Below, in pieces: positions 16,763 to 49,360 of a stretch of DNA of 64,000 nucleotides. Made by a program: the position numbers and the translations under genes. This DNA comes from Lepidodermella squamata (Eukaryota; Animalia; Gastrotricha): contig JBLDXI010000029.1 in assembly GCA_047495785.1 (NCBI GenBank), forward strand, positions 1,612,001-1,676,000. Direction: 5' to 3'. Within the stretch, counting starts at the first letter, position 1. Every line of letters starts with the position of its first letter. Under the pieces are notes generated by a model. It was not told the DNA's origin, searched no databases, and was given only the letters and a program-made list of their open reading frames with translations.

Positions 16763-18716
16763 ATGTTCCTATTTATCACCCCTAAGGCGTCTCTACTAGC
16801 CGAGTCGACTCTTAATTTACTCGTGAATCAGAAGCAACAACAGCAAAATAGCGAAGAAATCCCGTCGATAGCCGCCGGCATAGCTTCGATGGCTCGTTTC
16901 ACGGACGCCGATATGTTTCCTAATTCTTACGACGGTGACGACGAGGAGGAGGACTGGATTGAAGACGAGTCGCCTAAAACTGCGAAAACAGAGTTGAAAG
17001 CGCCTGGTGATTTAGCGAGTCAAATGCTGGCATTGACGCCGGTTGGTCGGCGGCGAACTCTGCGAAAAAAGCCGCTGACAAGTGCGATAAGTACGACATT
17101 TTCGCTAGCTGATACTCTATCGCTGGATTCTAGCAATTTTTCATCAATGGCGCCGATAGTTGTCGGCGGCAAAAAATGGACATGCCGGTATGGTTCGTTT
17201 TATAAAAAATTTCTCGAGAAAAATAAACCAAGATCAGGATATTAATTTATCAATGGCGGCAAGAACATCGCTAAGCATCGAGTGCCCGGACAGTGCACAA
17301 TTTTGATATTAATATTGAGGCCCACACATCTTATACAGTGCATAAAGTTTTATTAACCTGGAGAAAAGTCTCGTGCTTAATTGCCACGTGCGCGACTCAG
17401 TTTCTTTTTTAATCGTTTATGGGATAAATCAGCTTTTCGATGATCAATGTATTTAGGTACTTGTTTTAGTTTATTTGCAATATCTGAATCGAATTTTTGT
17501 TTGAAAGGCCATTTTTGGGGTAAAAATAAAAAAAAATGCGGGTCTCAATAGCCGATTTTTTGGAATTACGAATTTGTTTGGATCCTCCCCATAACTGTTT
17601 ATTTCAACTTCCCAGTAAATTCAGGTGTGCATTTTTCAATATTTTCCTCCAATACTGATCGAAGACTCAATCGGAAAAATCGCTGATTTGTGAAACCGAT
17701 TCTAATTTTTGATATCGGCTCAGCTCACTCTAGTATATTGTGACCCTTGACCCCTAATAGAGCATTAATTTAACCTGAATTTGGACGAGCCTTAATTTTT
17801 CAATATTTGTTTGATTTGTTTGAATTATTTTGAATATTTGAATTAGTTCATATTAATCATATTTTTTAATTTCGAGTGAAAGTTTTGAAAAAATCATAAC
17901 TTTCGTATTTTCAGATTGTCGATTTCGTCGATGCTGCCAGGCGACGCGAGCCTGCTTGTCCTTCGCGAGACCTTTGAAATAATCAAGCGAAATGCCGATT
18001 CTGTCTCAATTCAAGCCATGCGAGCCCTGTTACAGCGCCTGCCATCGGCCGCCGAAAAATTCGCTAAAGCTGGCAAGATAAAATACATTGACGACGATTG
18101 TAAGTTTCTAGAAAAACACAACTTCAATTTTAGACACCCGATTTTTTCAATTTCAATTTTTCAAAATTGATTTGAAATTGAAAAATTAAAAAACTTGTAT
18201 TAGAAAATTTTGGAATTTAATTTTAAATTTAATTTTAAAATTTCTAACTTCAACTTCAAAATTTAATTTCTTATTTTATGTTTTCAAATTTTTTTATCAT
18301 TTTTAGGGGAGCTTATTAATCACGGGCGTGCGTTTCTCGGCGCTATTGAGAAGTGTATATCCCGAGCTAAAGACGTCAAAGCCCTGAAAAACTACCTATC
18401 AAACCTCGGCCAAATGCATAGCCGAGCCGGTGTTAGATCGACGGAAATACCCGTTGCGCTTCACTTCTTCGAGTCAGCCATACTCGCGTATCTACGACCC
18501 TTTCACCTTCACCAAGAACCGAGCGATAACCCGAGCGGTAAAGTACCTACTATCAGCACTTCCTCAGTTCCGAACGGGCCTAGGTACTCGGATGAAACGG
18601 GCGTTCCGAGCGAGAATCTGGAATATCAAAACCGGTCGTCTTGTTTCGTATGCACAACTTGGCGAAACTTTTTCGATCTCATCAACATTTTACTTGTCAC
18701 TGATATTAAGGAGTGA
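16763..18716 (+). CDS. Globin G1 (long acidic/Ser-rich N-extension; E7 His, F8 His; HxH...CxxC); start uncertain
   Basis: Spliced (introns ~17188-17914 and ~18099-18307): LLVLRETFEIIKRNADSVSIQAMRALLQRLPSAAEKF...WELINHGRAFLGAIEKCISRAKDVKALKNYLSNLGQMHSRAGV...FFESAILAYLRPFHLH...CFVCTTWRNFFDLI. The A-H helix pattern of a 3/3 globin is recognisable. Confidence 0.85.
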
Positions 18717-19336
18717 AAAAGTCTTTAAATAAATAAACCCGGTGCAGTAATTGTTTTGGGCGATGAATAATCGAATTGTATGCGCGTCATTGGGTTGAGA
18801 TTTCGATCCCGCTTATAGGTTTATTTTTTGTCTCGGAATTATTGATGCCTAGATTCTACTGATTGGATATAAGCCTTAATGAGCGGCCGCAATCGCCTTC
18901 CTTGCGTAAATTTTACGCTTTGATATCTGCAAAATATTAAATTATCACGATCTAAAATAGCGTTGCAATATGAAATTTGACCTGCATGAAAAGATCACGC
19001 GCATAAAGACGCGACAGTAAATCAATGCCGCCAGAAAGGACAAAAGCTTGTTTCTCGCATATGAAAATTATATAACGATGATGTATTTTTCCTGTTTTGA
19101 AAGCTCGATGCTATAATAAAAATCATCGATGCTATTTTTGACGCCCACAAATTGGACTTCGTAATTGTTGTCCCCCCCGGATTTTTGAACCCCTGGATTG
19201 AAACATTTCCCTTGAATTCCACGATCATTTTCTGTTTATTAGCCAACTGAAATAGGCATTTTCGGTTTTTCGGTTCTCGTTAGATTCTGGGAAATTGTAA
19301 TCATATTAGAATTTTAACATTTTGAAAGATTTATAG

Positions 19337-20733
19337 ATGAACGGAATGAGAGCCTCGCTGACCGTTTCCGATGTGCTGAATCGGCACCACATTGGCCGGG
19401 GGAATCATCAATTCTGCTTATCCGATGAGGACATTAAAATGCTCCGCGAATCATTCGAAAAAATCAAACCACATGCAAGTGAAATAGGAACTCGAGCTTT
19501 ACAACAGTTAGTCATTTGCATAATAATATTTTCGAATTTACTTGAATATTTAGGAGGAAATTTTTCCTAAAAATTTAGCCAGTCAAAATTTTTTTGAGGA
19601 ATTTTCCGAATTTTGACATTATTCCTTATATTTGCCTGTTCAGCTCATTGTTAATCATCAAAGTTCTCAATTTCCATGTTCTCTTAAGAATTTTAAATAT
19701 TTATCATTTTTCGACCGTTTGAATCTTTGATTTTTCCGATATTTCGAGACTCAAAAGATTTAGAACGCTGAATCGACCTAAAAACAAAAAAAACTAGATT
19801 GAAACGCTTTCTGAAGTTTCATGTCTCTCAATGAATCAAATGTTTTTTAATTTTTTCTCAATTATTTTAATTTTTTTTATTTTACTCCTTATTCCTATCC
19901 GATGACCGATATCGGCCGATATCGATTTCCCATCTCGATCAAAAATCAAAAATCAAGATAAATTTAAAAAAAATTAAAAAATTAAAATTAAAATTCTATT
20001 GCAATGGATCAAGAGAGACAACAGTTTAAAATCAACAAAAGTCGGTTGTCGCGATATTGCCTATTTACCTTGAAAAAAATCCAATTGAAATCTAATTTAT
20101 GCGAATTTGTAATTTTTTTAAATTTTCAGAATAATCGAGCGAAGTCCGGCGACCTTGGAAATATTTCAAAACGGCCCAAATCGTCGCATCAAAACCGCCG
20201 ATGCTTGGGAGCTGCAGGGCGTTGGCGTGACCATTCTATCAAGCATAGAACGCTGCGTCCTCCGGCTACAACAGCCAATCAAACTCGAAGAGTACATCCG
20301 GCAAATCGTCGATCTTCACGCGCGAGTGTTCAAAGTCAACGTCGACGAGCTAACATTCGGCCTCGACGTGTTTCAAAGCGTAATTCTCGAATTTCTCGAC
20401 GTTCAACATGGCCACCAAAAAGATGACAGCCTGCTGAGCTCGCCCAGCAGTGAATTAACCGTACCAAGTCCCGTACTGTACGACCGGCCGATAACGATGA
20501 GCTTAACGCCAACGCTGCAGCCTAAAAATAGCTCGAGGAGTAGGAGGCCGTCGCGCCGAGCTTCCGCTTTCGACGTGGAATTGGAGATGTTGCAGGTCAG
20601 TAGGAAGCGCAGCAGTGAAGCGTGTCGAATCTGTTCGCTGTGGAAGCACTTTTTCCAGGCCATTTCGAACCACATGCAGCAATGCGCAATGGCTATAAAG
20701 GACGATAATAACACGGCTGTTAACTCTCATTAA
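19337..20733 (+). CDS. Globin G2 (E7 Val, F8 His; HGH...CRIC with ~69-aa GH insert)
   Basis: LSDEDIKMLRESFEKIKPHASEIGTRALQ | phase-2 intron ~19507-20129 | IIERSPATLEIF...WELQGVGVTILSSIERCV...YIRQIVDLHARVFKV...CRICSLWKHFF. Confidence 0.85.
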
Positions 20734-20742
20734 GCACCAAGT

Positions 20743-20965
20743 TACCGTAACGAGGGGTCAACTTACAACCTAATAATCAGGGGCTAAAGCTGCACGAAAA
20801 GATGCGTTTTAAATTGCTAAAAAATCTGGAAAAAATGCGAAAAATTCCAAATTTTACAGGAAATCAGGAATCACCTTGCTAGGACTAAGGTTGAAATTTC
20901 GGACTTTTTCGAGTGATTGCTGATTTTTAAACAGGTTTCGTCCGAAGTTACCCCTCGTTACGGTG
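20743..20965. mobile_element. MITE immediately 3' of the G2 stop codon
   Basis: Inverted termini ACCGTAACGAGGGGTCAACTT / AAGTTACCCCTCGTTACGGT. Confidence 0.7.
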
Positions 20966-21249: not shown

Positions 21250-22163
21250 ATGGGTGCTGGATGCTCTTTGCCGGCGCTAGTTGTGCGGCAGGTGACGTGG
21301 CGCCGCCACCCTGACCCATTTTTCAGCGTTAATGAAATATGGCTTTTACGCAGCAGTTATATTTTGATTAAACGAGATAGCGGCAATCAACGGTTTGGAT
21401 TCGATCGCGAAAAATTATTCAAACTATTTATTCGTAATTTTACAGAATTATCGATGAAATTCCCGGAGCTATGGCTGTTATCCTCGGCAAAACTTATCAG
21501 CCTGGCTCGAAAGAGGTTTGGGAAATTGAGTTAATGGCTCAAGGTAAATTTTGCAATACCTCAATTTTCGTTCATTTTAACTGTTAAAATTTTTCCAAAT
21601 TTTAAAAATTTTTGTTCGACTGAAAACTTTGCGCTAAATTTCGAAATTTTAATTTTAATTTTTTTAAATTTTCCTATATTTATACAGTAATTATTTTTTG
21701 CTTTTGATCGATTTTTACTGCTCCAAAATATCTGAATTTCATTTTTATCATGAATTTTTTTAATTATTTCAAAAATACAGGATTGATATTTCTGAGCGGA
21801 ATCGAAAGAGCCTTGCTCTTAGTCGACGAGCCCTATTTACTGACGGCATTCGTCCATCAATTGGTTCGCAATCACTCTAAACGATTCAAAATTCCTATCG
21901 ACATGCTAAAAATTGCCTTGGAGACTTTCCGAACAGCTGTCATGGTCTACCTGCAAACAAAACACCACATCCACTATGCGGATAGTGCAAATTTCGTCGA
22001 GAAATTAACCGAAAAATTAGAATCGCAAGAAATTGATTACTTCAGTGAAAAAACGTGCAAAATATGCGCGGCTTGGAGGCATTTTCTAGACACCCTGATC
22101 GGCCTAATTGTTACTAGGCTATTAACCAAATGCAAGCTGCCCTATTGTTGCGATGATTCATAA
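21250..22163 (+). CDS. Globin G3 (MGAGCS N-terminus; E7 Gln, F8 His; HxH...CKIC; apparently shortened B helix)
   Basis: MGAGCS...FSVNEIWLLRSSYILIKRDSGNQR | IIDEIPGAMAVI...ELMAQG | LIFLSGIERAL...FVHQLVRNHSKRFKI...KHHIH...CKICAAWRHFL; introns ~21392-21445 and ~21544-21780. Confidence 0.8.
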
Positions 22164-23242: not shown

Positions 23243-24701
23243 ATGGGTAATTCTGCCAGAAAACCTGTTGAAGAAAACGGCTCCGCTGGCGGTGGAGATG
23301 TGAAGCAGAAAATGGCCTTATCGCTTCAACTCAGCGAAGCAAGTGCGAAGTCAATAGCTGCTGCCTCAACCTTTGAATGGTCTCAAGAGGAACTCAATAC
23401 GTTAGCCGATAGTTTCGCCTATGTTAAACAGAACTGCCACAAGGTTGCGCTCAAGGCCGTTATCAGGTAAAATTCGCGTTTTTCTAGTTTTTTCTTTGGA
23501 TTTTTTGGGTTAATTTTTTATATAGGATGGTTGATACAATGCCTGACACGGCTGGTGCGTTGGAAATCGGCACCAAAAATACTGGCGAGTCATTTGGGCT
23601 GATGAATCAAGGCCTCATTTTCCTTACAGGTAAGGTATTCTAGAAACAAGAAAGCTCCTGCAGCGTATTACCCATTTACAGTCAATGAACAGCGTTTTTT
23701 TTGACCAAAATTGCTGGAATTTTTAGGAGAGCGCTCTATTTCTTTAAAAATGAACGCATGAATTTTTTTAAAAATTTCTGATCTTAATTTATAAATATTA
23801 TTACAGATTTTAATTTTTTTCAATTCTGCTCTATACATTTTAAGAATTAAATTAATAAAAAATTCAAACATGTGAAATTTCAATTTTTTTTAAATTTTCA
23901 TGCTGTCCGCTAAGGTTGAAATTCCCCAATTTTGTTCCCCAAATTAACTGAAATCTAAGCGGAAGATTAGGAATAAATTTGCTATATTGCTGAAATCAAT
24001 GTATTCAATTGTTACTATGGTAGGATTGGAAAGCATAAAATCACACAACTTCAGTTTTCTTTATTCTTTTCGAATCAAAATTTGAATTTTACAATTTAGC
24101 AAGCATTTCATATTTAGCCTATCTAAAGCATTGCGCAATTGTCCTGAGCTAATATGTCGCGACGCAAAAAAAATATTTTTTCTAATTTTACGAATTGTTT
24201 TTATCTGGAATTGTTTATCACTCGGAAAAATTAGGCAGTTCAATTTTTTCAAAAATATTTTTGTTTTTCGTTCAAGGTATAGAAAAGTGCATCGAGCGGG
24301 CTAATGATCCTGCCAAACTGCGAGCTTATGCCAAGCATCTAAACTCGATACACAGTAAACAGCACCAGCTGAAGCTGCATCACATGGTCGGCGGGCTGAA
24401 GGCGTTCGAGGACGTCATTCTCGAGTGCATCCAAACCGGATACCAGCACAAACCGCCCCGCCGGCAAAGTTCGGCCATGACCATTCATTTGATGCAGCAA
24501 CACCCGTCTCAACGGCCGCGGCGGGTGAGCATAGTTGGCGAGCAACAGCCTTTGCAGTTACTCGGGGCCGAGCACGTGGCTATTTGTGCGATTTGCAAAG
24601 TTTGGATCAAGTTCTTCCACTTGTTATACGTGACTTTTGACCCTAAAAACGGATTGGTTAACAAGGAATTGATGGCTAATGCTGATTCAGCTCGATATTA
24701 A
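23243..24701 (+). CDS. Globin G4 (MGNS N-terminus; E7 Gln, F8 His; CAIC)
   Basis: WSQEELNTLADSFAYVKQNCHKVALKAVIR | MVDTMPDTAGAL...LMNQGLIFLTG | IEKCIERANDPAKLRAYAKHLNSIHSKQH...EHVAICAICKVWIKFF. Confidence 0.85.
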
Positions 24702-26148: not shown

Positions 26149-26780
26149 ATGGGGTCGAATTGTTCGCAGATAACAACAAAGCTTACTGTTATCTCTGGTC
26201 CGTCAGTCATTACGCAAGAGGAGTCTCAGTTGATTCAGGAGAACTTCGAAGCCATGAATAAGCATAGCCACGAAATCGCTCTGATGTGTTACGAAAGGTA
26301 AATAACTTTTCACCATTCAAACAAATGTATCTAACTCAAGCATTCAGGATTCTAGCTGAGATACCGGAAACGGCTAACGTTTTGAAAATGGCTGGTAAAG
26401 CAGCATCTACCGAGAATGAGCTGATGAATCAAGGCCTGATTATGTTGAAAGGTTATTCATTCCAATATAGATTCGACCCCTTATCAACTTTTTTCATTTT
26501 AGGAATTGAAAAATTTGTTAAGCTCTCGAGCGATCGTTATCTTATGTTCGAAGCAGCTGGCCGGCTAACGGCGTCGCATTCCGAACGGTTCGGGTTAACT
26601 GCCCACCGAATGTCACGGGCCATTCAAGCGATTCAGGAAGTCTTCATTCAGGAGGCAATGATGCATTGCAGCCATGATGAAGAAATGACGCGAACGGCTT
26701 GGAAACGCTTTTTCCGCGAACTCAACTACATATTCAGCTCGATGGCTCGCCGAAAGCCGAGCACAGTTGCAGGGCCGTAG
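26149..26780 (+). CDS. Globin G5 (MGSNCS; E7 Gln, F8 His)
   Basis: MGSNCSQ...ITQEESQLIQENFEAMNKHSHEIALMCYER | ILAEIPETANVL...ELMNQGLIMLKG | IEKFV...AGRLTASHSERFGL...TAWKRFFRELNYIF. Confidence 0.85.
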
Positions 26781-26901: not shown

Positions 26902-27557
26902 ATGGGAGGATCTTGCTCACAGAATCTTGATGTCTCGGTGACGGAGCAAGATGTGCTTCAAGATCGAGCTGAAACTTCGATCAGCAAGGATGAAGCTAAT
27001 TTGCTGGCTAACAACTTTCGGGCGTTGTCAAAAAACTCTGAAGAGATAGGACTAGCCTGCGAAGAAGTGTTCGTTCCACTTGAAATTTCTGTCTTTAATT
27101 CTCCATCCTGTTATATAAAGGCTTATTGAAAGCATGGACGATGCTGCAGCTGTTTTAGGGGCTTCAAAAGGACCAGGGGGTTCAAAATCGGCCTTAATGG
27201 GACAGGGAGTGATTCTTCTCAAAGGAATAGGTCTCCTAGTAACTCTAGCGACCGATATGACGAAACTGAAAGCGACAATTGAACGACTATCCATCAAACA
27301 TTTGGACACTTATGGACTAACTCCAGTAAAGATGGCACAGGCCCTTCAGTGTAACCTTTTCTATTACAAGTTTTAACATTTCCTGTACTAGTTTTACAGG
27401 TTTTGAGGATATCTTCATCGAGCAAGCAATCAGCTATTGCCAATCAGACCGGGAGTTGACTCACTTTGCTTGGCGCAAGCTTTTCTGGGAAGCGAAAGTC
27501 CTGTTTGTCATTCAGTCAAAACGGATGAACATTGATCGCCAAAGTGATGCATTATGA
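26902..27557 (+). CDS. Globin G6 (MGGSCS; E7 Gln, F8 His)
   Basis: ISKDEANLLANNFRALSKNSEEIGLACEEV | LIESMDDAAAVL...LMGQGVILLKGIG...IERLSIKHLDTYGL...ALQ | CFEDIFIEQA...FAWRKLFWEAK...stop 27555-27557. Confidence 0.85.
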
Positions 27558-27818: not shown

Positions 27819-28510
27819 ATGGGAAGTGTCTGCACTAAAACGGTCACCAACAGTATTCCCCGCTACGACGAACACATGGCAGCCGAGCTGAGTCACGACG
27901 AAGCAGCTTTGCTATCCGAAAGCTATCGCTTAGCCTCGAGGCATTCCATGGACATTGGTTTTCTTTGTGAACAGAAGTATATTAGAAAGCATTTATGCAA
28001 CGTTTTGTCATCTTTCATCTTTCAGACTAGTGAAGTCAATGCCAGCTGCCGCTGAGATTCTGCAAGTTAACGGCGAATCGTCGCGAACACATCGTTTTTC
28101 CCTAATGGGCCAAGGCGTAATTCTCGTGAAGGGCATCGGCTACTTCGTAAACTCTGCTCGGAACCAGGAGAAAATGATCGACCACGTGGATAGAATTGCA
28201 ACGAGACACGCTGAAAGGTTCAGTTTGTCGCCGGAACAGATGGTCGAGGCGTTAGACTGTATCGAGGACACTTTCATTGAGCAGGTCATCAAACTGATAG
28301 ATGAAGAGTTCGCGGACAGTAAGTTCTCGTTTATCAAGGTTGAAATTGTTCTCAAGAATATTATTTTTTCAAGGTACTGCCATTGCGTGGAGGAAACTGT
28401 TTAGGGATGTTAAGAATCTCTTTACCGAGCAGTCGAAAACGCTGCTGATTGTGAGACCGCAAACATCTCGCAGTATGGTCAGCAACAGCAACGGAAGCTG
28501 GAAGGAATAG
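27819..28510 (+). CDS. Globin G7 (MGSVCT; E7 Gln, F8 His)
   Basis: LSHDEAALLSESYRLASRHSMDIGFLCEQK | LVKSMPAAAEIL...LMGQGVILVKGIGYFV...VDRIATRHAERFSL...CIEDTFIEQV | ...TAIAWRKLFRDVK. Confidence 0.85.
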
Positions 28511-29115: not shown

Positions 29116-29912
29116 ATGGGCGGAGTTTGCTCGTCGACTGTTGATCAAATTGTCGAGATGCAGAAGGAAATGTCCTCTGTGACCAACGGATCGATCATTT
29201 CGCCAAAGGAGGCGGTCATCTTACGGGATAATTCCATGGCACTATCTCGAAATACCTCAGAAATAGCTCCTGTAATTATCAAAATGTAGTTTTTTTCATT
29301 TTCCTAACTGCTTTTTCATTGATTTTTCCTTCTCCAGAATCATTCAAAGCGACATTTCGATGATAGGAATCTTCAAAGCAGCGGGTGTGGACTCGGATAA
29401 CCCGAAAGATCTATCCAGATTAGGGAAGGCCTTCATCGCAGGTTAGCGATGCCAAAAAATTGCCAATAAAGAATTTGTCTTTTGTCATAGGATTAGGATA
29501 TTTGGCAGAGCACGCGAATGATATTCCAAGGCTGCGGGGTTATTGTGATCGATTGGCACAAAGACATAACACTAAATTCGGCTTGTCTGGCCAAATTATG
29601 AGTCGTATGGTCCACGCATCCCGCGACGCTTTCATTAACGAAGCCCTTATATGCTGCCAATCTCAAAAAGACGAAGCCAAGATTGCCTGGCTCAAATTTT
29701 TCCAGATGATCGAAGGTATTTTCGCGTCGCAGACATCCCATTTAAATTCGGTCGAGAAGCCATTGATCCCAGACAAAACAGTCACGAAGGCCGAGTTAAT
29801 CCCGCCGCAGAAATCTAATGGTTCACTACGAGAGAAATCTGTCAGCGCAGTCTCCACAATTAACCACTCATATCGCTCGCCTAATAATAATGCAATGGTT
29901 AATGTTGAATAA
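29116..29912 (+). CDS. Globin G8 (MGGVCS; E7 Leu, F8 His; C-terminal extension)
   Basis: ISPKEAVILRDNSMALSRNTSEIAPVIIK | IIQSDISMIGIF...DLSRLGKAFIAG | LGYLAEHANDIPRLRGYCDRLAQRHNTKFGL...KIAWLKFFQMI. The first two exons are missing from the ORF track. Confidence 0.8.
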
Positions 29913-30007
29913 ATTATTAGCGTGGGTCTCTTTTCTGAGAATTCTAGCACCGTCAATTTAGGACAGAAACCCTCAAATCTACTATTTATGCGATTCGAGA
30001 AAATTCT

Positions 30008-30710
30008 ATGATTCAAAACATGTTATCGAAAAGTCGAGAAATTGATGTTCCCCGGTCTAGCACCGGGGATTGTAGTCCATTCTCAGGAACACCACTTTCC
30101 TACACAAACAGCCCACCTAGTTTCGGAAACCGCCTTTCCTTGGAAGAACGGGAAATCGTTCTGTTACGGCACTCCTTCGCCGCAATGATACCACGCGCGT
30201 CTGATATCGGTCTTAAAATTGTGAAAGGGTGAGACAAATCGCTTGAAAAATGACATTTGAATCATGCAAATTCGAATCTTAGGATTTCTGAGCGAGTTCC
30301 AGAGGCACTTGACATTTTCTCAACATCTCCTAATAAAATTATCCGGAAAGGTTCGTTGCTTTCAATTTTCATCAGTAGGGTAACGATTTATTTCCGTAGG
30401 AGATAAATGGGAACTTATGTCTCATGGCAAAACCCTATTTTCCGCATTAGAGCGAGCTATACTCCGCCTAAATCGACCCGGTCCTCTTGCAGACTACATG
30501 AGAACTCTAACAGAGACGCATAAAGATCGTTACAGAGTCGTTGCTCCAATGATGGTCGTGGCGACAGAAGTTATGGAATTAGTTGTTCTCGACGAACTGG
30601 TAATAGCTCACGGCCACGACACAGAAAATGACCCGTGCGATGTTTGTCAATGCTGGCGCAAGTTTTTCGATTTGTTCCGCGGCCATCTAATGTCATCTCA
30701 AACCAAGTGA
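30008..30710 (+). CDS. Globin G9 (E7 His, F8 His; compact HGH-x6-CDVC motif)
   Basis: LEEREIVLLRHSFAAMIPRASDIGLKIVKG | ISERVPEALDIF...IRK | GDKWELMSHGKTLFSALERAI...YMRTLTETHKDRY...IAHGHDTENDPCDVCQCWRKFF. Confidence 0.85.
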
Positions 30711-30929: not shown

Positions 30930-32435
30930 ATGCATCCTAGAATAGGCTTGACCAAGTCTTGCCCGATTGCCGTGCCGAAATCCAAGACCAGTGAAATTTT
31001 CGTGCGCGTCCCAGATGGCGATGAGCTAAATGTACACAGCGCTCCGAAGAGCAGTGATGGCTTGTTAACAGTCAACGCTTTGCCTATGTGTCTCAAGGCC
31101 AAATCCTCCGATAATCATGGCGAATCGGCCTATTCAAGAAGTTACAGCGAATGTAGGGGCTCGTCGTTTCTCAATGCGGAGGCAAATCGATTTTTGGACA
31201 TTGCGAAGCAGCTGAATGGAGGGATTATGATTTCGATTAGTTCCCTCAACAATTCTATCGATGATAGCCCACCTGGAAATGAGTCGAATGGAGTGCGCTG
31301 CGACCAAGTTGACCTAATACTCGACGAAACCGAGACAGACGCTGTTTTGTCAATTTTCCGCGATGCGAAAATGAAACTTGAGGATTTAGCTAATGATAGC
31401 TTGAAAAAGTTTATTTTCTGATAAATCAACCGTTGCTAACGCTTTTTTCTCGCATAGGATGAAGTCTGACACAGTAGGCAATGGAGATGGTGAGTGGGAA
31501 CTACTAAGCCAGGACATTTCCTTCCTCGACGAAGTTTCGGGCTGTCATAAACATCCTACTCTTCGCGTCATTAGTCGTAGACGTGCTGTTCCTGGTTCGC
31601 TCGATCAAGCTTCCGGTCCGATGATCTACAAAATAGGCCATTTATCTGGCAACAAAGAAGATCTATCTTGCAAGAATTGCTATGATAAACGGAGCGAGAG
31701 CCTGCCGAATGAAAATATTGAAATACCGGAACTCAGATCATCGAGAAGATCATCCGGCAGGCCTCAGTTAGTCTCCCAGCAGTTCAGTTTCACCGAGCGA
31801 CGATCCTTAGCTCCGGAGAATTCGCTGGATGTGCTTCCACGTCAACTCAATCTACCAATGGCATTCTCAGAGAAGGAAATCTCCATCCTATGGGAAACCT
31901 TCAACTACGTAAAGCACGATGCCAGTGAAATTGGGCCGAAGGCTATTAAGAGAATCGCTGCCCTAGTTCCGGACACATTCAAGATAACTTCAGAAAATGG
32001 AGTGATTCAAGTAGGCGACGATCAATGGGGGAAAATCATGCAGCAAGGTTGGCTTGAAATCATTTCGTAACCTCCTCCTTAAATTTTTGAACATTGTCAG
32101 GTTTCACGTTTTTAAATGGAATTGAGCGATTTCTATTGCGACTCAAGCGCCCACCCGTTTTGCAGCGCTATATCAAGCAGCTGGCTGAGAGTCATGAAAA
32201 GAAATACGGCGTAGGTGTGGATAAGCTGACAAGTGCTCTGAACGTTTTCGGCACGTTGCTGATGGAGTATTTGCAAAAGAAACACTACCACGGCAGCAGT
32301 GCCGATTTTGATTTGACGATGATGAAACGCTTCACCGCTGATCACAGCCAGTGTGAAATTTGCTCGTCGTGGATAAAATTCATTGGATTTATCAGCCTTC
32401 AATTATCAGCTTGCACTAACGTGACTGAAAATTAG
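30930..32435 (+). CDS. Globin G10: long N-extension containing a vestigial half-globin, then a full globin (E7 Gln, F8 His; HYH...CEIC)
   Basis: Exons ~30930-31408, 31458-32047, 32101-32435. Full domain: FSEKEISILWETFNYVKHDASEIGPKAIKR...IMQQG|FTFLNGIERFL...YIKQLAESHEKKYGV...CEICSSWIKFI. Confidence 0.8.
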
Positions 32436-32851
32436 ATGAAGTAACCCTGAGTTTCGATGGCTTCAGTCCGTTTCAAAGTAAAGCTATGTTGTGCAGATAG
32501 GACAGTGTTGGCTATCAAGAAGTTGGAATCTTTGACAGGAATTCACTTGCGTGCAGATAGGAAAAGGTGTATTGCTAATTACTTTCTATAGAAAAATATG
32601 CGGAAAAACCGCACAGGGCTCGGCCAGCATGTGTACGGTTTTCTTCCTCTATGCGTAAATCATAATAAATCAAGAAACACGTGAAGTTTTCCATGTATTA
32701 GCTTTCTCCAGTGGCTCTTTGGCGATGTGTGATAGCAAGGCACTGTATACCTATCAATCCCTAGCATATCTTTCACTGAGGAGCAGATTCGAGTTCCTAC
32801 CCTCAAGTGGTACAATATTACAAAACATTCGTTAAACCACATCTTTATCGA

Positions 32852-33008
32852 AGCGCCAAAACAACAACTATAAAGTTCGCTATGGAAAGTACGATCGACC
32901 CTTGAACGGAAGCCAAACTTACGATCAGTATGCTCGAACGTACTACATCATTACGCTGGGCTCATTCAAGTACGATCGAATGAGTCATTGAAATGGTTGT
33001 TTTGGCGC
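32852..33008. repeat. Small fold-back element
   Basis: GCGCCAAAACAAC ... GTTGTTTTGGCGC termini with internal repeated AGTACGATCG. Confidence 0.5.
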
Positions 33009-33647
33009 GTCTCTAGCGAGATATTGCTGCGCCGTGTTTTGATAGAAAATCTTACTGCCAGCCAGTTAGAACGGATAAGGTCTTTCGAAGATTCGCAGGC
33101 TTTTGTACTGATTACTTTCCTCTCATGATAAAATTCTCATACCAGGGTATTTATCGCAATTCGAGAAAGCGTGATTTCCCGCTGAATAAATTGTTTCTTT
33201 TTTTCTGCCGCAATTTTTTACATAATTCTATATAAGTATGCAACTATGCGAGCTTTTAATTTTACGCTGACGAAAGCAGGATGGTTATTTATCAATGCTA
33301 ATTTGATTCATATTTTGCATCGCTTATATAAAAGTAAACCCAGCTTATATATGTTCTACGAAACGGACCCATTTCCTTCGCTTCAATTCCGGATCCTATC
33401 GATGCGTTAAACGATCGCTTTCTGATATCTCTGGAACTCGAATTACAAGCCTGAAGAAGGAAACGCTAGAGCTCACTGATGTCGGGTAAACTTTCAGCGC
33501 ACTTTTTTAAACTATGCGAAATTCAAGAGCGCCCACTTACTCCAAGCAAATTATTGAGATCTCATTTCAAATTTAGAATTTAGAATTCGAATTTTCCGTA
33601 GATCTTATAATAATATATTATAATATTCACGTCTGCAAACGGTGGCA

Positions 33648-34785
33648 ATGTCAAAATTGGTAAGTAGGATTATTTCCCCGGCTTTAATTTGATATTGAGA
33701 AGTAATAATATTATCCTCTCCGGGGTGTGTTAAATTGATTTCCGTCTCATCCCACTTGCATCAGCGATGAATAATAATTGTCCTTAAACACTGCAAAACA
33801 GACCCCAGGGAGCAGCGAGGCGGAACCGCCGTCACGTTATTATCAGCAGAATCGGCAACGTCGGTCGTCTCATTCACATTTCTCAATTGGAATGAACATC
33901 GTCCGCAGGTTTAGCTCTTCCCTTCTGCCAGATCGCGCTGGCAATCACCGCGACTCGAGCGATAGTTTTACGATAAATGAAACAATCGCCGAGAAGCCGC
34001 TATCTCACAGCCTGGTTTCTACCACCCTGAGTTACGAAGGCCTCCTCCAGCAGAAGAATCTGGCCGTTCTACGGCGGAAAAGCAGTGGCGCGATGCCGAA
34101 CACCCCAACGTCTGATTTCAGCCTAGCGGGTAGTTCGGAATGCTGCACGGATGAGGATGATAACGACATGTTTCTCGACCTAATTCTGTCCAATGACGAA
34201 GTTCACCTGATTAAGGAAACGTTTCGCGAGGTTAAAGATCGGCGCGATGAAGTTGCACTATGTGGCGTTCAATGGTAAGTTTCAGGTCACATGCGTTTTG
34301 CTCTCAAATAGGAAATGTTTTTGTATGTCAATAGTGTTGCCGCCAGGATGCCACAGACGTTTCGTAAACTGCATATCAACCCGTCAACAGTGAGTCATCA
34401 TGAACTCATGCCATGCGACACCTGGGAGTTGCAGCAGTGCGGCGTCAACTACCTCAGCCTAATCGAGCGATGCATTCTCCGCCTTAACCGACCGCATCGA
34501 TTGAAAACGTACCTACTTGAGGCGAGTGTTGAGGAAGAGATGAATAACTCGGTCACATCCAGTGAATTCGCCCTGATAATCGCGTCGTTTGAAGAGGCGC
34601 TGATCACATTTTTCCGGGGTAGGAACCATAATATGGAGAAGTGCATCGAGGAAACGACCTTCTCCATGGAGACAGTTTCATCCTCATCAGGTTCGGATTC
34701 TACAACTGACAGTGAGATGATCGTTGCCGTCTGGACTAAATTCTTCCGTCTAATCTATTTCGCTCTATCGCTTAAAAGTAATTAA
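33648..34785 (+). CDS. Globin-fold protein G11 lacking the proximal His (F8 Glu; E7 Cys), with long Ser-rich N-extension
   Basis: Micro-exon MSKL (33648-33659) splices in frame to 33802. LSNDEVHLIKETFREVKDRRDEVALCGVQ | VAARMPQTF...WELQQCGVNYLSLIERCILRLNRPHRLKTYLLEASVEEE...VAVWTKFFRLI. Confidence 0.75.
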
Positions 34786-35150: not shown

Positions 35151-36120
35151 ATGGGGAAAGCGATTTCAACGATGAGCATTTCGGACCGAGACGGCTTTTT
35201 CGTTGCACGACATCACGATCACGGCATTGTAGCCGTTCAACACCACCTTAAAGCGAATCAAAGCGATTATGATATCGAGCGAAGGAGGAGGTCTATTCAG
35301 GTCGTGACGGCTTATGCGGAGAACAGTAGGAACCAGCGGAGATACACAGCTACAAGCGGCGATAAGCCTAGTGGCAGACCTGGGTCGAGACTTTTCTTAT
35401 CCACAAGTATTACGCCAAGCCCTGAAGAGATTGGAATACTTCAGAAAAGTATGGAACGGTGCAAAAAGCAAAGAGAAAGAATCGCGAATCGAGCAATTGC
35501 TGGGTGAGATTCTGTTCCAACTTTTAAAGAAGTAATTGCTATTTTTTCCAAAATTTTCCAGCTTCATACGGAATATGCCAGATGCGCCTGAGATGTTGGC
35601 TAGAGCAGCTAAAGCTGGAAATCGCAGGCTGGACCCTGCTGAGCTTACCCGTCGTGGGTTGATGATGTTTTCCGGGATAGAAAGATGTGTCTACGCCCTC
35701 GATAATTTGGACAAATTGCAGTCAATGGTCGCAGATTTCGCGGATCTCCACGCCCGCCATCAAGTCCCGGTTGAAGCAATCTCAATAGTCGCTGATCTAC
35801 TTGAGACGGAAATTCTCTTCGCCGTCAGAGGAATGCATGGTAAGAGCTGCCGGTTGATCTATCGCAAGACGACGCTTGACTCACTGGCTACTGCGGCGAT
35901 TTCGAACATCAGCATCGGACTGAAAGCTGCGTCTGTTAACAATTTGATCGACGAAAAGGCGACCGAGCATTTGACGGCGCGGCACCTGACGCCGCACAAT
36001 GACTGCATGGTTTGCAATGCTTGGCGTAAATTGTTCGACATTATTAACATTGTCATGATATCGCAGATGCTTTCCACGACTAAACTTGTAGCAGCTAAGA
36101 CGCTTTCTGCTGCTACCTAG
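35151..36120 (+). CDS. Globin G12 (MGKAIS; E7 Arg, F8 His; H..C...H..CMVC)
   Basis: PSPEEIGILQKSMERCKKQRERIANRAIAG | FIRNMPDAPEML...ELTRRGLMMFSGIERCV...VADFADLHARHQV...GMHGKSC...PHNDCMVCNAWRKLF. Confidence 0.85.
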
Positions 36121-44155: not shown

Positions 44156-45041
44156 ATGGGCTTGGTTGGCTCGGTTTTCCGTGATCGAGAGCGTAGCAGT
44201 GACATTCAAAAGCGGAGAATTCTCGCCGATCGCCAAGTCAGAAGCGCATTTGTCGCCCTGGAATACGCGAATCGCTTTCAAATCAACAGCGGCTACAAGG
44301 AAAAGCCACATCTTTTCATTTCCTCCCGACTGACCCCGACTCCAGAGGAAATCGACGTAATTCGACGAAGTTTCGAACGGATTAAGGGGCAGTCTGAGAA
44401 GATCTCATTGAATGTCATTCGAGGGTATGGAAAATCGATTTTACAACTTTTTAAATGTTTAGCTTTTGTTTACAGGCTTGTAATGCGTATGCCTCAAGCG
44501 AGTGCGATTTTTAGCACCCACGACCCCGCCGGCATTAAACGAGGTGAAACCTTGCGATTTGTCACTCGAGGCTACGTCATGCTCCACGGGCTGGAGCACT
44601 GCATACGGAATCTGGAGAATTTGGACCAGCTGCAGGTGAAAATAGCAGCGTTCGCGGAAACTCATGTCAGGTACAAAGTTCCAATCGAGTCGGTGCCTAT
44701 CGTTGCAGACAACTTTGAAACTGAAATTTTAATCGCATGTCGGGGACTGCACGATAAAACCTGCGCGCTGACATCCGCCAGCAATGCAAGAGCTAAGACT
44801 TGCGATGGAAACGGACACTCGGCATGGAAAATAAACAAGGCCGGCTTGAATCACAGCTCCACGTGCACTGAACAATTTGACGACCATTCAGTTTGCGTTT
44901 TGTGGTAAGCCTTGATTTGCTCATTTCAATTGCATTTACATCATGATTCATTACAGCACGGCATGGAGGAAATTCTTCGATCTCGTTAATATCGTCATGA
45001 TTTCGGAAATGCTCTGTCAGGTTAATGATCAGTCGCATTGA
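44156..45041 (+). CDS. Globin G13 (MGLVGS; E7 Arg, F8 His; H..C...H..CVLC); close paralogue of G12
   Basis: PTPEEIDVIRRSFERIKGQSEKISLNVIRG | LVMRMPQASAIF...FVTRGYVMLHGLEHCI...IAAFAETHVRYKV...GLHDKTC...DHSVCVLC | TAWRKFFDLVNIVMISEM. The last intron splits the second Cys codon. Confidence 0.85.
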
Positions 45042-45192: not shown

Positions 45193-46579
45193 TTAGGTCG
45201 CGGTTATACGCTTTATCCAATCTAAGACCGAGCAAACGCGTACGAAACTGATGATTTGATACTCGAAGATTTTTGTAAATTCACGCGACCAGACACCTTC
45301 TAAAGTGAAAGCGTTGTCTTTATAGCAGGTAAGCGGACTTCCGCCGATCTCAGCAGAACCAGGTATCCAGTTGAAACCAGTCACCCGGGCGCAAACCATG
45401 TTCGGATGAATTTTGCCGGGCAGTGACGCGTTGTAGTGCTCCTGGCATTCGTCAGGCTGTATAAGATTCACGGCAGCTTTTCGCGTCTTAATCGACCCGG
45501 TCATGAAGCCTGTATTAGTGAACCCGGTGTTGGTTATGATGGATTGATCGCTTGTCATGCATGGGTCTTCGCACGATGCTGGCAGGCATATCGGCTGAAT
45601 ATTCCATGAATCGAAAGTTATAGGACGTGGGACAGTCGCATTCCCTATAATCGAAAAATCATTAATCTCCTTTAAGATTAAAAATTATAAATCTCTTGGC
45701 AATGAGTCAATTTAATGATGAAATCGATTTTCTCGAGGATATCGAAAAATAAGGCGCTTACTTGATATTTTAACTAGACAGAAGTCGTAGCCCATCCTAG
45801 TTGCATGCGACAGTGGATGGATTACAATTTCGGAAGAAGTCGACATGAAGGAGACTTTGACACCAAATTTGTCGTTCATAAAACCACTCGTCCATCCTCC
45901 AACGATAGTCAGCGCCTTCGGAGCCAATGCGACGCAACAATTCGCAGAAGTCAAGACCCAATCAGCATTCACAAGTGCCCCACCACATGCTGTTGATTGG
46001 TTGAAAAAATGCCGTCCGGATAGCCAGACCTGCGCCATGAGAGTAACCTATGTAATTTGCCTTAAGGCAGCTGTTTGTGATCGAGCATGCACGTTATTCC
46101 TTACCTGCCACGGGAATTCGTGATTTTCTGTCGCAACGTAGCCTGCATCTGTCAGAACACCGAAATTTCCTATTACATCAGTGCTGTTGCTTCGGATATC
46201 ATTTCGACTCCATAAAATACTACGGCCACATTTTCCTTGTACACTAGGAGGGACTGGTATCCTATCTGTGATGAAATATAATGTTAAGGATTAAAAATAT
46301 TTTTAGAATTTAACCATGAAATGCAATCGCAGAGTTGCCTGGAGGTGGAAGGGTGATGTTGTCGATCGCTTCAGCTTGTTCCCTCGACTTGCTTGTAGCT
46401 CTCCTTGTAGAACTAGGAGCTAAATAGTCGCCGTAAGTTATCGAAGGGTTGAGAGTATGGAGTAAACTTGGCATCGAAGGCTCGGGCGTAACCCGAACAT
46501 TGGCAAAGCACGCCGATGTCAACGATTTGCGGCTGACGATGTGGAAAAGCGATATAAGAACGAAAGCAAAGTTGGCCAT
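45193..46579 (-). CDS. Secreted trypsin-family (S1) serine protease homologue, predicted catalytically inactive
   Basis: Signal peptide MANFAFVLISLFHIVS; HEFPWQ; CGGALVNADWVLTSANCC (His->Asn); YDFCLVKI; NIQPICLP; MVCA; PGSAEIGGSPLTC (GDSGGP lost); FVRVCSVLDWI. Confidence 0.85.
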
Positions 46580-47448: not shown

Positions 47449-47675
47449 TGCGAATGGTCAGAAAAAGTCGCAGGAGGCGTAGGGCATTGCTGGAATGCAC
47501 ACAGTTTTAATGAGGAGTTTCGAGAAATTGGAGAATTTCAGGAATTGCTCCAACATTGAACGTCGCCGATGTCGCACTTCTTCAAGCTCCTCAGTTTCTC
47601 GCAACTCCTTATTAAAGTGGCGCGCATTCCATCAACGTACTACGCCACCCCCGCTGCTTTTTCTGACCGTCGCAA
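47449..47675. repeat. Imperfect palindrome / MITE-like fold-back (~225 bp)
   Basis: ggtcagaaaaag...ggcgtag...tggaatgc...taatgaggagtttcgagaaa pairs with tttctcgcaactccttatta...gcattcca...ctacgcc...ctttttctgacc. Confidence 0.7.
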
Positions 47676-48408
47676 TGCGTATTTCATGACTTTTCCAAAG
47701 AATAATTAGGGCGCGTCCCAGGACTCACTGTGAAGAATTTAACGATGTTAATTAGTGAGGGACTCTATCGCCTATTTTGATTCTTAGTTTGGGCCAACGG
47801 GATGAAATATCACACGAATATATGATTTTTAGTATTCCTGTACAAATTCAGTCCAAATGTACCTCCCCGCACCTTTACCACGCCTTTTATCAATCATTCG
47901 TCGTTTGATTATCCAAAGCATCAACATATATAAATTATGCATAGCTCTTTCATAAATGCCACTTTTCACTTGTCGTCGTCAAGTTTTGATTTAATTAGGC
48001 GAGCGAAGACGTATAAGACGAAAATCTGACAAAAGCGCAAGTATATAACCGATTACGCTCAGTAAAGTCCCGAACGAGACAAAAAAGACATGAGTGGCTC
48101 ATTCTTAAAGAAGCACGCAAATGCTGAACGAGCGCGTTTCGTGTGCGTGTAGTAGAACTATAATAAATTGCGCGAATTAGATAATGCAAAATACACGCGC
48201 GATCAACTAATCTTCTAGCGGACGGAATAATCTCTCTTATCGCGCTGTGCCTCGTTGATCGATTTTGAATCCACAATTCAGCCGTCTGTAATACTTTTGT
48301 AGGCTTAATGCTCGGATTACTCGATTGCGAATTTTACAAACAAAATACGATCTTAGCTTATTTCTCAATGGCTGTAACTTCAGTGCATCAAGTCGATTAA
48401 AGGAGAAA

Positions 48409-49360
48409 ATGGGTCAAAGTGCGTTGACAGGTGACCGTAGACGCTTGAATGATGGTCAAGAAGGCCCGAAGAGTGATGAACCTAAACGGCGGTTAACCGA
48501 CGCCACCGCAGAACTAACTATTCGAAAAACACGAACATTTGACAGGATTTCTACTCTGAACGATCAATCAGCCAAAGATGCACATCTGTGCACGTTCACG
48601 ATCCAGCCGCCATGTACAGTTCTTCACTCAGCTGGTCATTCAGACGCATCGCTAGCTGACGATGGCTATGATGAAGACGAGGAAAGCCTAGCCCCAGAGT
48701 CTGAATGGCTCATAAGCGCCGAAGATAGATCAGTCATTCAGAAGACGTTCGACAACGTGAAAATAGCGAGAGAATACATCGGCTGGAAAGGAATGCAAGG
48801 GTAGAAATTTGTTTGTTCTTATACTCTCTGATCATTTAATTTCTAGGATTTTCGAAACATTTCCCGACGTAGCGCACAGTTTTCGAACATCTCCCCATAC
48901 GCCGATCAAGAAAGGGTAAAAGTGAATTATTTTTAAAATAATTAATAATTCGTCCTTCTTTTTCTCCACAGTGACAACTGGGAGCTAATGGTAAATTGTC
49001 TGACCTATTTTCGGGATTTTTCATTGTCTTTATCTACAGGGTCAGGGTATGACGTTCCTCTCAGGCATCGAGCGTTTCCTGAAACGTATAGGAAGACCAC
49101 GTGGGTTCAGAAGTTATGCCGCCGCGTTGGCGCAATCCCATCGGAAGTACTCTGTGTCTCCACACTACATGTTGACAGCGCTGGAAATATTCCAAAGCGT
49201 CATAGTCACGCATCTTACCAGCCGCGAATCGCAAATTGAGGGCGAAAAAATTCGTGCGTCATGGACACATTTTTTCGATGTGCTACGTAATGAACTCGCC
49301 TCGGCCTCAAACGCAGTAGCGACTAACGAGCAGCTTTGTCCTTACTACTCGAGTGAATGA
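48409..49360 (+). CDS. Globin G14 (MGQS; E7 Gln, F8 His; includes a 20-nt micro-exon)
   Basis: ISAEDRSVIQKTFDNVKIAREYIGWKGMQG | IFETFPDVAHSF...IKK | GDNWELM (48971-48990) | GQGMTFLSGIERFL...YAAALAQSHRKYSV...RASWTHFFDVL. Confidence 0.85.

What the first reader, a model, noticed from the sequence alone, without database searches (positions are those of the whole stretch)
18308..49060. Distal E7 position takes six different residues across the array
Seen, aligning on L-x-x-X-G: His (G1, G9), Gln (G3-G7, G10, G14), Val (G2), Leu (G8), Cys (G11), Arg (G12, G13). The CD1 Phe also appears replaced by Leu in several (G4-G7, G12). Established: E7 governs ligand binding. Gln occurs in sulfide-binding and high-affinity invertebrate globins, and His permits hexacoordination. 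Inference: a panel tuned to different ligands (O2/NO/H2S/anions). Arg at E7 is especially unusual.
Basis: partly seen in the sequence, partly recalled or inferred. Interest (0 to 1): 0.75.

Follow-up and report, generated by a model that had tools for sequence, protein, structure and literature searches.

The report
Globin array with varied distal residue
Fourteen neighbouring globin genes of a small invertebrate carry six different amino acids at the key ligand-facing position E7, and a distant relative keeps the same odd residues in matching genes, so they look like deliberate specialisations whose targets are still unknown.

Summary
I built spliced models for all 14 genes.

That column is the true E7:
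- A profile alignment to solved globins puts it on their distal His.
- It is the 7th residue of the E helix in two AlphaFold models.
- The E7-to-F8 spacing is 32 in all 14, as I recall for neuroglobin and cytoglobin.
- The ancient B12.2 intron fixes the upstream register.

CD1 is Phe in only 6 of 14 genes.

Six residue types is not a statistical excess, because the median core column of these old paralogues has 6.5. What matters is that E7 differs between paralogues but is kept between species. A syntenic array in a distant metagenomic relative has Gln, Cys (with Glu at F8) and Arg in the matching genes. E7 is identical in 10 of 13 reciprocal-best pairs.

G9, G11 and G12 are spliced as modelled in a probable RNA run. 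Variants in G9 to G11 are 25 synonymous to 2 non-synonymous.

So the paralogues have probably diverged in function. The proposed O2/NO/H2S/anion panel is untested, and no gene has a Lucina-type sulfide pocket. Large invertebrate globin families with variable E7 are known, and Arg at E7 has been noted in Daphnia. This is a new variant of a known kind.

The parts
17931..18716 (+). G1, 2 exons (17931-18099, 18307-18716). E7 His (CAC, 18321-18323), CD1 Phe, B10 Met. Has no B12.2 intron; its intron is at E2.1.
19337..20733 (+). G2, 2 exons (19337-19506, 20130-20733). E7 Val (GTT, 20221-20223), CD1 Phe, B10 Leu, E11 Ile, giving a fully apolar pocket. Long GH insert.
21250..22163 (+). G3, 3 exons (21250-21392, 21446-21543, 21781-22163). 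E7 Gln (21540-21542), CD1 Ile. The first junction is doubtful: the donor is weak and the B helix comes out 6 residues short.
23243..24701 (+). G4, 3 exons (23243-23466, 23526-23629, 24277-24701). E7 Gln (23608-23610), CD1 Leu. Starts with MG.
26149..26780 (+). G5, 3 exons (26149-26297, 26348-26451, 26503-26780). E7 Gln (26430-26432), B10 Tyr, CD1 Leu. N-terminus MGSNCS.
26902..27557 (+). G6, 3 exons (26902-27068, 27121-27350, 27400-27557). E7 Gln (27203-27205), CD1 Leu, B10 Glu. N-terminus MGGSCS.
27819..28510 (+). G7, 3 exons (27819-27976, 28026-28318, 28374-28510). E7 Gln (28111-28113), CD1 Leu, B10 Glu. N-terminus MGSVCT.
29116..29912 (+). G8, 3 exons (29116-29285, 29338-29441, 29491-29912). 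E7 Leu (TTA, 29420-29422), CD1 Phe. N-terminus MGGVCS. Belongs to the G5-G8 clade, whose other members have Gln.
29948..30710 (+). G9, 5' end not determined, exons 29948-30228, 30283-30350, 30400-30710. E7 His (CAT, 30423-30425), CD1 Phe. Intron 2 is seen as a joint in run X1 and intron 1 is supported by a loose end.
31459..32435 (+). G10, exons 31459-32047 and 32101-32435. E7 Gln (32044-32046), CD1 Thr (its orthologue keeps Phe). The intron is at E8.1 and there is no B12.2 intron.
33778..34785 (+). G11, 5' end open, exons 33778-34274 and 34335-34785. E7 Cys (TGC, 34438-34440), F8 Glu in place of His, CD1 Leu, E11 Tyr. It is spliced and covered in run X1, and its listed variants are 10 synonymous to 1 non-synonymous.
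35151..36120 (+). G12, exons 35151-35503 and 35562-36120. E7 Arg (CGT, 35653-35655), E11 Met, CD1 Leu. N-terminus MGKAIS. The junction is supported by a loose end in X1. This is the gene folded in the AlphaFold model.
44156..45041 (+). G13, exons 44156-44424, 44476-44904 and 44957-45041. E7 Arg (CGA, 44567-44569), E11 Met, CD1 Phe. N-terminus MGLVGS. Sister of G12 (support 100/99).
48409..49360 (+). G14, 4 exons (48409-48800, 48847-48915, 48972-48990, 49040-49360), including a 19-base micro-exon. E7 Gln (CAG, 49043-49045), CD1 Phe. The model matches the relative's contiguous protein P0007.

Best explanation
The stretch is an old tandem array of 14 intact globin genes. Direct transcription evidence exists for G9 to G12, the only part where reads could be laid. 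The genes belong to a lineage-specific, greatly expanded family with at least 45 matching exons genome-wide. The fold is an ordinary 3-on-3 globin, closest to cytoglobin, neuroglobin and invertebrate nerve or 'membrane-type' globins. Nine of the 14 start with Met-Gly, and seven of those fit the MGxxxS/T fatty-acylation pattern (five also have Cys at position 5).

Shown: the variable column is the real distal E7 position. Its residue was fixed differently in different paralogue lineages long ago and has since been held by purifying selection. It differs between paralogues and is the same between orthologues of a distant relative.

Inferred: the paralogues differ in distal-pocket chemistry and probably in iron coordination.
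- His-E7 members (G1, G9) are likely bis-His six-coordinate electron-transfer or nitrite-reducing globins, like neuroglobin, globin X and GLB-26.
- Gln-E7 members hydrogen-bond a bound diatomic ligand. G5 has the TyrB10/GlnE7 high-affinity pair.
- Val/Leu-E7 members (G2, G8) have open apolar pockets.
- Arg-E7 members (G12, G13, with a conserved Met at E11) place a cation at the pocket mouth. It may act as a gate, or as an anion and proton-relay residue, as distal Arg does in haem nitrite reductases and peroxidases.
- G11 (Cys E7, Glu at F8) cannot ligate haem in the canonical way.

The likely physiological setting is membrane-associated redox, NO, nitrite or ROS chemistry rather than oxygen transport. 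The actual ligands are unknown.
For: - E7 assignment: profile alignment to solved globins; the same profile state holds His or Gln in 80 of 98 database globin domains.
- AlphaFold model of G12 exon 2: E helix 25-44 with Arg31 as its 7th residue, and His63 = F8.
- Full-domain model of the G14 orthologue: pLDDT 87.8, E helix 65-84, Gln71, His103. It matches cytoglobin, Lucina Hb, Spisula nerve Hb and myoglobins at Z 17-18 over about 145 residues.
- E7-F8 spacing is 32 in all 14. The first intron is phase 2 at B12 in 12 of 14.
- Selection: variants in G9-G11 exons are 25 synonymous to 2 non-synonymous.
- G12 and G13 are sisters (100/99), 52% identical, and both have Arg.
- The syntenic array on metagenome contig L039 has Gln, Gln, Gln, Gln, Cys (with Glu at F8) and Arg (with Met at E11) in the corresponding genes.
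- E7 is identical in 10 of 13 reciprocal-best pairs at about 0.42 core identity, p = 0.012.
- A third Arg-E7 gene on contig C13 (L024) has an Arg-E7 orthologue at 54% identity.
- Expression and splicing of G9, G11 and G12 in run X1.
- Distal Arg assists anion binding and proton delivery in haem nitrite reductases (PMC10370594).
- N-acylated globins with redox roles: GLB-26 (PMC3520999), GLB-12 (PMC4686822), zebrafish globin X (PMC3176823).
Against: - No biochemical datum exists for any member. Haem binding itself is only inferred.
- Six residue types at E7 is no more than an average column shows among these paralogues, so diversity alone proves nothing.
- Only one relative species is available. 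Three reciprocal-best pairs differ at E7 (His/Phe, Leu/Phe, Ile/Leu).
- Run X1 is only guessed to be RNA and is held as contigs. G1-G8, G13 and G14 have no expression evidence here.
- Paralogues are too diverged for dN/dS site tests.
- A single origin of all the Arg-E7 genes is not rejected (AU p = 0.16), so convergence is not shown.
Confidence: 0.6

Rival explanations
1. Relaxed constraint. In this family the distal residue does not matter, for instance because the proteins act through the haem edge, another ligand or no haem at all. E7 then simply drifts like any other column in redundant tandem duplicates.
For: E7 has 6 residue types against a median of 6.5 per core column. CD1, B10 and E11 vary too. 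One member has even lost the proximal His. Three reciprocal-best pairs differ at E7.
Against: E7 is identical in 10 of 13 orthologue pairs at about 42% background identity (p = 0.012). These include the rare states Arg (two lineages) and Cys. G12 and G13 both retain Arg. Purifying selection on the genes is strong, at 25 synonymous to 2 non-synonymous.
Confidence: 0.2
2. One reading: a sensor or carrier panel in which each E7 type is tuned to one small ligand. His or Gln would serve O2, apolar residues NO or CO, Gln with aromatic residues H2S, and Arg anions.
For: General knowledge that E7 controls ligand discrimination. TyrB10/GlnE7 occurs in G5. Distal Arg favours anion binding in haem enzymes (PMC10370594).
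Against: No member has the PheB10/GlnE7/PheE11 pocket of the Lucina sulfide carrier. The N-terminal acylation motifs and the neuroglobin/cytoglobin-like fold point to membrane redox roles rather than carriers. Nothing here measures a ligand.
Confidence: 0.15
3. Artefact: the column is not E7, or the odd residues come from wrong splicing, intron read-through or pseudogenes.
For: One apparent Arg-E7 elsewhere in the genome (L033) turned into Gln once its intron was removed. The first junction of G3 is doubtful.
Against: Every E7 codon lies inside an exon, and the E helix to F8 is ungapped. The introns of G9, G11 and G12 are seen in reads. Profile and model evidence agree on E7. All 14 reading frames are open. 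The relative's contiguous proteins reproduce the spliced models.
Confidence: 0.03

Closest known systems
Caenorhabditis elegans globin family (33 genes; PMC2228317, PMC2576238)
   Same: A large lineage-specific expansion of divergent, non-respiratory globins with N- and C-terminal extensions. Some are N-myristoylated. There is little conservation of intron positions. CD1 is replaced by Leu, Ile, Tyr, Met or Val in some, and E7 is not always His or Gln.
   Different: In C. elegans E7 is His or Gln in all but four genes (Ile or Val), and the genes are mostly dispersed. Here 5 of 14 genes in one array have Val, Leu, Cys or Arg, and the genes lie in tandem, with the order of the G4-, G6/G7-, G10-, G11- and G12/13-type genes kept in a distant relative.
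Daphnia pulex monodomain HbL globins (PMC7457136)
   Same: A survey reports Ser, Ala, Arg and Leu at E7 and loss of the F8 His in some copies. Natural Arg-E7 globins and globins without F8 His are therefore on record.
   Different: Those are haemoglobin-like (HbL) genes of an arthropod whose function is questioned. Here Arg-E7 (with Met-E11) and Cys-E7 without F8 His are each conserved in an orthologue of another species, and the G11 gene is under purifying selection.
Globin X / GbX-like membrane globins (PMC3176823, PMC3206486, PMC7457136)
   Same: N-terminal Met-Gly (plus Cys) acylation motifs, N-terminal extensions, and a neuroglobin-like E7-F8 spacing and fold.
   Different: Arthropod GbX and GbXL keep CD1 Phe, E7 His and F8 His almost without exception, and GbX carries an intron at E10.2. 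Here E7 and CD1 vary widely and no gene has an E10.2 intron. The introns lie at B12.2, E2.1, E6.0, E8.1 and E14.1.
Cytoglobin, neuroglobin and Spisula nerve haemoglobin (solved structures 2dc3, 6q6p, 4mpm, 8oup)
   Same: These are among the best structural matches, tied with Lucina Hb and myoglobins (Z 9.4 for the partial G12 model, Z 17-18 for the full-domain model). E7 to F8 is 32 residues here, the spacing I recall for neuroglobin and cytoglobin.
   Different: Those are bis-His six-coordinate proteins with His at E7. Only G1 and G9 in the array could work that way.
Haemoglobin Zurich (beta His63 to Arg) and myoglobin His64Arg mutants (own knowledge, not checked in a paper here)
   Same: Arg at E7 in a globin. 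In those proteins the long side chain swings towards solvent or the propionates and opens the pocket.
   Different: Those are a pathological variant and engineered mutants. Here Arg is the conserved wild-type residue of a paralogue lineage.

Membership tests
Globin superfamily (3-on-3 fold, Pfam PF00042) | Globin fold with helices A to H | tested here: met
   The full-domain model of the G14 orthologue has pLDDT 87.8 and matches myoglobins and cytoglobin at Z 17-18 over about 145 residues. The G12 exon-2 model matches cytoglobin at Z 9.4. As single exons, the pieces give Pfam Globin E-values from 7.7e-6 to 0.12, with no hit for the G5 piece, and only the G14 exon is over the cut-off.
Globin superfamily (3-on-3 fold, Pfam PF00042) | Proximal His at F8 | tested here: met
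   His in 13 of 14 genes. G11 has Glu, as does its orthologue.
Globin superfamily (3-on-3 fold, Pfam PF00042) | Ancient introns at B12.2 and G7.0 | tested here: inconclusive
   B12.2 is present in 12 of 14 (phase 2 at C2-6). G7.0 is absent from all. Extra introns lie in the E helix.
Globin superfamily (3-on-3 fold, Pfam PF00042) | Phe at CD1 and His or Gln at E7 | tested here: not met
   CD1 is Phe in 6 of 14. E7 is His or Gln in 9 of 14. Such exceptions are tolerated within the superfamily (PMC2228317).
Globin X sensu stricto | N-terminal myristoylation or palmitoylation motif | tested here: met
   Nine of 14 start with MG. Seven of them (G3, G5-G8, G12, G13) have Ser or Thr at position 6, and G3 and G5-G8 also have Cys at position 5. 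The motif is read from sequence only.
Globin X sensu stricto | Intron at E10.2 (PMC7457136) | tested here: not met
   No gene has it. E-helix introns lie at E2.1, E6.0, E8.1 and E14.1.
Globin X sensu stricto | Groups with GbX in a phylogeny of animal globins | not tested
   No reference GbX sequences were available by reference. Earlier notes of this scan call the family a GbX-like offshoot.
Bis-His six-coordinate globins (neuroglobin/cytoglobin type) | His at E7 able to ligate the iron | tested here: inconclusive
   Only G1 and G9 have His at E7. Coordination itself needs spectroscopy.
Lucina HbI-type sulfide-binding globin | PheB10, PheCD1, GlnE7 and PheE11 pocket (PMC2657002) | tested here: not met
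   No gene has Phe at B10. The Gln-E7/Phe-E11 genes (G3, G4, G10, G14) have Asn (doubtful), Val, Ile and Met at B10.
Ascaris/GLB-1-type high-affinity globin | TyrB10/GlnE7 pair (PMC2867796) | tested here: met
   Met in G5 only.

The most novel reading that the evidence does not exclude
The Arg-E7/Met-E11 globins (G12, G13 and their orthologue) would be a previously unrecognised functional class. They could be membrane-tethered globins that use a distal guanidinium for anion chemistry such as nitrite or peroxide handling. Alternatively they could be His-Met six-coordinate electron carriers. G11 (Cys E7, no F8 His) would be a conserved thiolate-ligated or haem-free derivative. The array would then be a toolkit of mechanistically distinct haem proteins rather than a set of oxygen binders.
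Probability: 0.15. Interest if true: 0.75.

Novelty: new variant of a known kind. Interest (0 to 1): 0.45.

Why it matters
Why some small invertebrates keep dozens of globins is an open question. This array offers a compact natural experiment. There are 14 neighbouring paralogues with six distal-residue types. At least three of those types (Gln, Arg, Cys) are held constant across a deep species split, alongside varied B10, CD1 and E11 residues. Expressing a handful of these proteins would show directly how far the globin fold can be retuned by E7 alone. It would also show whether a wild-type Arg-E7 globin performs anion or redox chemistry.

Tried and rejected
- A word-based protein search with G12 exon 2 found nothing at E <= 1e-3. 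The exhaustive profile search was needed and gave only 54 hits.
- Literature searches for 'Arg E7' and its spelling variants gave no relevant paper. The Daphnia mention came from reading PMC7457136.
- An apparent fourth Arg-E7 gene (L033, C29 near 1.484 Mb) was an intron read-through. After splicing, its E7 is Gln.
- I tested whether Arg-E7 arose twice. The free tree separates G12/G13 from L024, but holding them together is not rejected (AU p = 0.16). Convergence is therefore not claimed.
- dN/dS site models among paralogues were not attempted, because identities of 20-50% mean synonymous sites are saturated.
- For G3 I considered a 35-base intron and a frameshift as alternatives to the weak-donor 53-base intron. 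None is satisfying.
- Read laying could cover only 6 kb (G9 to G12), so the other genes have no read evidence.
- External search and fold tools received single exons by reference, or database proteins.

Full report
**What is there**

The window is part of contig C29 of a 121-Mb eukaryotic genome. Other notes of this scan guess a rotifer, and I did not test that. The neighbouring genes are ordinary animal genes: a class-C GPCR, Ig domains, ankyrin repeats, an SNF transporter and a trypsin-like protease.

Between 17.9 and 49.4 kb the + strand carries 14 globin genes. Raw ORFs showed the E-to-H part of each. I joined exons through GT..AG introns of 44-650 bases that keep the frame and the family's conserved spacing.

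The models were assembled only inside scripts. External tools received single exons by reference.

Checks on the models:
- In run X1, which covers exons but not intergenic DNA, contigs skip 30351-30399 (G9 intron 2) and 34275-34334 (G11 intron 1).
- Loose ends at 35503 and 30282 read on into the next or previous exon of G12 and G9.
- A database protein of a relative (P0007) is collinear with my four-exon G14 model, including its 19-base micro-exon.
- Only the first junction of G3 remains doubtful.

**Is the column E7?**

Yes, on five grounds:
- MAFFT aligns all 14 proteins without gaps from E2 to F8.
- A profile of eight contiguous exons, searched against all PDB sequences, hits only globins at the top. 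In each of the four printed alignments that cover this column, it falls on the distal His of the solved chain: FQAHS in 2d2m_B, LRGHS in 4hrr_B, FKAHC in 3wct_C and AKHGT in 1xq5_B.
- The same profile state holds His or Gln in 80 of 98 globin domains recovered from the 1.84-billion-protein library. His sits 32 states later at F8.
- AlphaFold2 of G12 exon 2 (pLDDT 72.6) gives an E helix at 25-44, so Arg31 is its seventh residue, and His63 is F8. A full-domain model of the G14 orthologue (pLDDT 87.8, pTM 0.84) gives helices A to H with the E helix at 65-84, Gln71 and His103. It superposes on myoglobins, cytoglobin, Lucina Hb and Spisula nerve Hb at Z 17-18 over about 145 residues. If the model's E1 at 65 is equated with sperm whale myoglobin's E1 at residue 58 (textbook numbering), Gln71 falls on His64. 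The tool does not print residue pairs.
- The first intron is phase 2 in the codon six residues before the C2 proline in 12 of 14 genes. That is the ancient B12.2 intron, and it fixes the B-helix register independently.

**The residues**

| Position | G1 to G14 |
|---|---|
| E7 | H, V, Q, Q, Q, Q, Q, L, H, Q, C, R, R, Q |
| CD1 | F, F, I, L, L, L, L, F, F, T, L, L, F, F |
| B10 | M, L, N (doubtful), V, Y, E, E, I, V, I, V, I, I, M |
| E11 | F, I, F, F, M, L, L, F, L, F, Y, M, M, F |

F8 is His everywhere except G11, which has Glu. Its CD1 list is right but incomplete.

**Is it more than chance?**

Not as a count. These paralogues are only 20-50% identical. The median core column has 6.5 residue types, and 68% of columns have at least six. 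E7 behaves like an average column, while E4, E8 (an invariant Gly), E15, E16 and F8 are held.

The informative signal lies elsewhere. The profile search found only 54 relatives in 1.84 billion representatives. Among the single-domain hits are proteins from ENA metagenome contigs of one distant relative, 27-54% identical to their best matches here.

Contig L039 (12.8 kb) carries G4-, G6/G7- (two copies, opposite strand), G10-, G11- and G12/13-type genes in the same order as the window (the copies between them, such as a G9 type, were not found on it). Their E7 residues are Gln, Gln, Gln, Gln, Cys and Arg. The G11-type gene there also has Glu at F8, and the G12/13-type also has Met at E11.

Over 13 informative reciprocal-best pairs genome-wide, E7 is identical in 10, at a mean core identity of about 0.42 (binomial p = 0.012). 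The exceptions are His/Phe, Leu/Phe and Ile/Leu.

Other evidence points the same way:
- G12 and G13 are sisters (support 100/99), 52% identical in the core, and both have Arg.
- A third Arg-E7 gene lies on contig C13 (L024). It sits next to a Gln-E7 sister and has an Arg-E7 orthologue at 54% identity.
- Of the best-supported differences between the window and runs X1/X2 that fall in G9-G11 exons, 25 are synonymous and 2 are not. Both non-synonymous changes lie in the N-terminal extensions. G11 alone shows 10 to 1.

The genes are therefore under purifying selection. The E7 state is a conserved property of each paralogue lineage.

**What it most likely means**

The family is an expanded (at least 45 matching exons), mostly N-acylated offshoot of the neuroglobin, cytoglobin and globin-X-like globins. 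Across the genome its E7 is His, Gln, Leu, Ile, Val, Arg or Cys.

I infer functional divergence of the distal pocket, as set out under the best explanation. The physiological setting is probably membrane-associated redox, NO, nitrite or ROS chemistry by analogy with GLB-12, GLB-26 and globin X (PMC4686822, PMC3520999, PMC3176823).

For Arg-E7 the most concrete idea is an anion and proton-relay role like that of distal Arg in haem nitrite reductases (PMC10370594). Alternatively it could act as a gate onto the propionates, as in Hb Zurich (own knowledge). The conserved Met at E11 raises the possibility of His-Met coordination.

None of this has been tested.

**Comparison with what is known**

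- Variable E7 and CD1 in large invertebrate globin families is established for C. elegans. There E7 is His or Gln except for four genes with Ile or Val, and CD1 can be Leu, Ile, Tyr, Met or Val (PMC2228317).
- In Daphnia pulex, monodomain globins are reported with Ser, Ala, Arg or Leu at E7, and some lack His at F8 (PMC7457136).
- By contrast, arthropod GbX and GbX-like globins keep CD1, E7 and F8, and GbX has an E10.2 intron (PMC7457136). This array lacks that intron, so I do not file it as globin X proper.

What is new here is the combination. It is a tandem array whose gene order is partly kept in a distant relative, and its unusual E7 states (Arg with Met-E11, Cys with no F8 His) are conserved between species. 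That makes it a new variant of a known kind. It offers well-defined candidates for bench work but is not a new kind of system.

The same genome's other globin clusters have been noted before by this scan on other DNA.

Noticed in passing
window 34438-34540 (G11); L039:9323-9760: G11 has Glu where the proximal His (F8) should be, and Cys at E7. The same pair occurs in its orthologue in a distant relative. G11 is spliced in run X1 and its listed variants are 10 synonymous to 1 non-synonymous, so it is not a pseudogene.
   Followed up: partly
window 35665-35667 and 44579-44581 (E11 codons of G12, G13); L039:9813-10814: Met at E11, directly over the iron, accompanies Arg at E7 in G12, G13 and the relative's orthologue. 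The independent Arg-E7 gene on contig C13 has Leu there and its orthologue has Phe. His-Met coordination is conceivable.
   Followed up: partly
whole array, e.g. 18100-18306, 21544-21780, 23630-24276, 48916-49039: Intron positions are very fluid. B12.2 is kept in 12 of 14 genes and the classical G7.0 intron is absent from all. New introns lie at E2.1 (G1), E6.0 (G14), E8.1 (G3, G10) and E14.1 (G4, G5, G8), in the D region (G9, G14), in the G helix (G6, about F8+17) and in the GH region before the H helix (G7, G13). G14 has a 19-base micro-exon at 48972-48990.
   Followed up: partly
G000:C13 about 1,013,257-1,013,634 (locus L024, minus strand): A third Arg-E7 globin lies outside the window, next to a Gln-E7 sister (L019). 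It has an Arg-E7 orthologue at 54% identity (P0008) in the metagenomic relative.
   Followed up: partly
window 21330-21480 (G3): The first intron of G3 is uncertain. The only in-frame solution uses a weak GTTTGG donor and shortens the B helix by 6 residues. Two reading frames of the same DNA both look globin-like.
   Followed up: partly
window 26983-26985 and 27897-27899 region (B10 of G6, G7); G5 B10: G6 and G7 have Glu at B10, an unusual charged residue in the distal pocket. G5 has the classical TyrB10/GlnE7 pair.
   Followed up: no
window 18640-18660, 20640-20660, 36020-36040, 44890-44970 and others: A CxxC motif lies just before the H-helix Trp, and His-rich ends of the G helix flank long variable GH inserts in G1-G4, G9, G10, G12 and G13. 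The CxxC is absent from G5-G8, G11 and G14. This is the subject of another finding of the scan.
   Followed up: no
window 32850-33049: A short stretch between G10 and G11 has about 40-fold excess depth in DNA run X2 (3969 against about 100), so it is a dispersed repeat.
   Followed up: no
window 45193-46038 (minus strand): A trypsin-like serine protease gene (Pfam Trypsin, E = 2e-9 for one exon) sits on the opposite strand between G13 and G14. The 8 kb between G12 and G13 (36.1-44.1 kb) holds no recognisable globin remnant.
   Followed up: partly
window 6576-13768 (minus strand): A run of four ankyrin-repeat ORFs lies upstream of the globin array. A class-C GPCR-like ORF is at 652-2163 and an SNF transporter exon at 56011-56883.
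   Followed up: no
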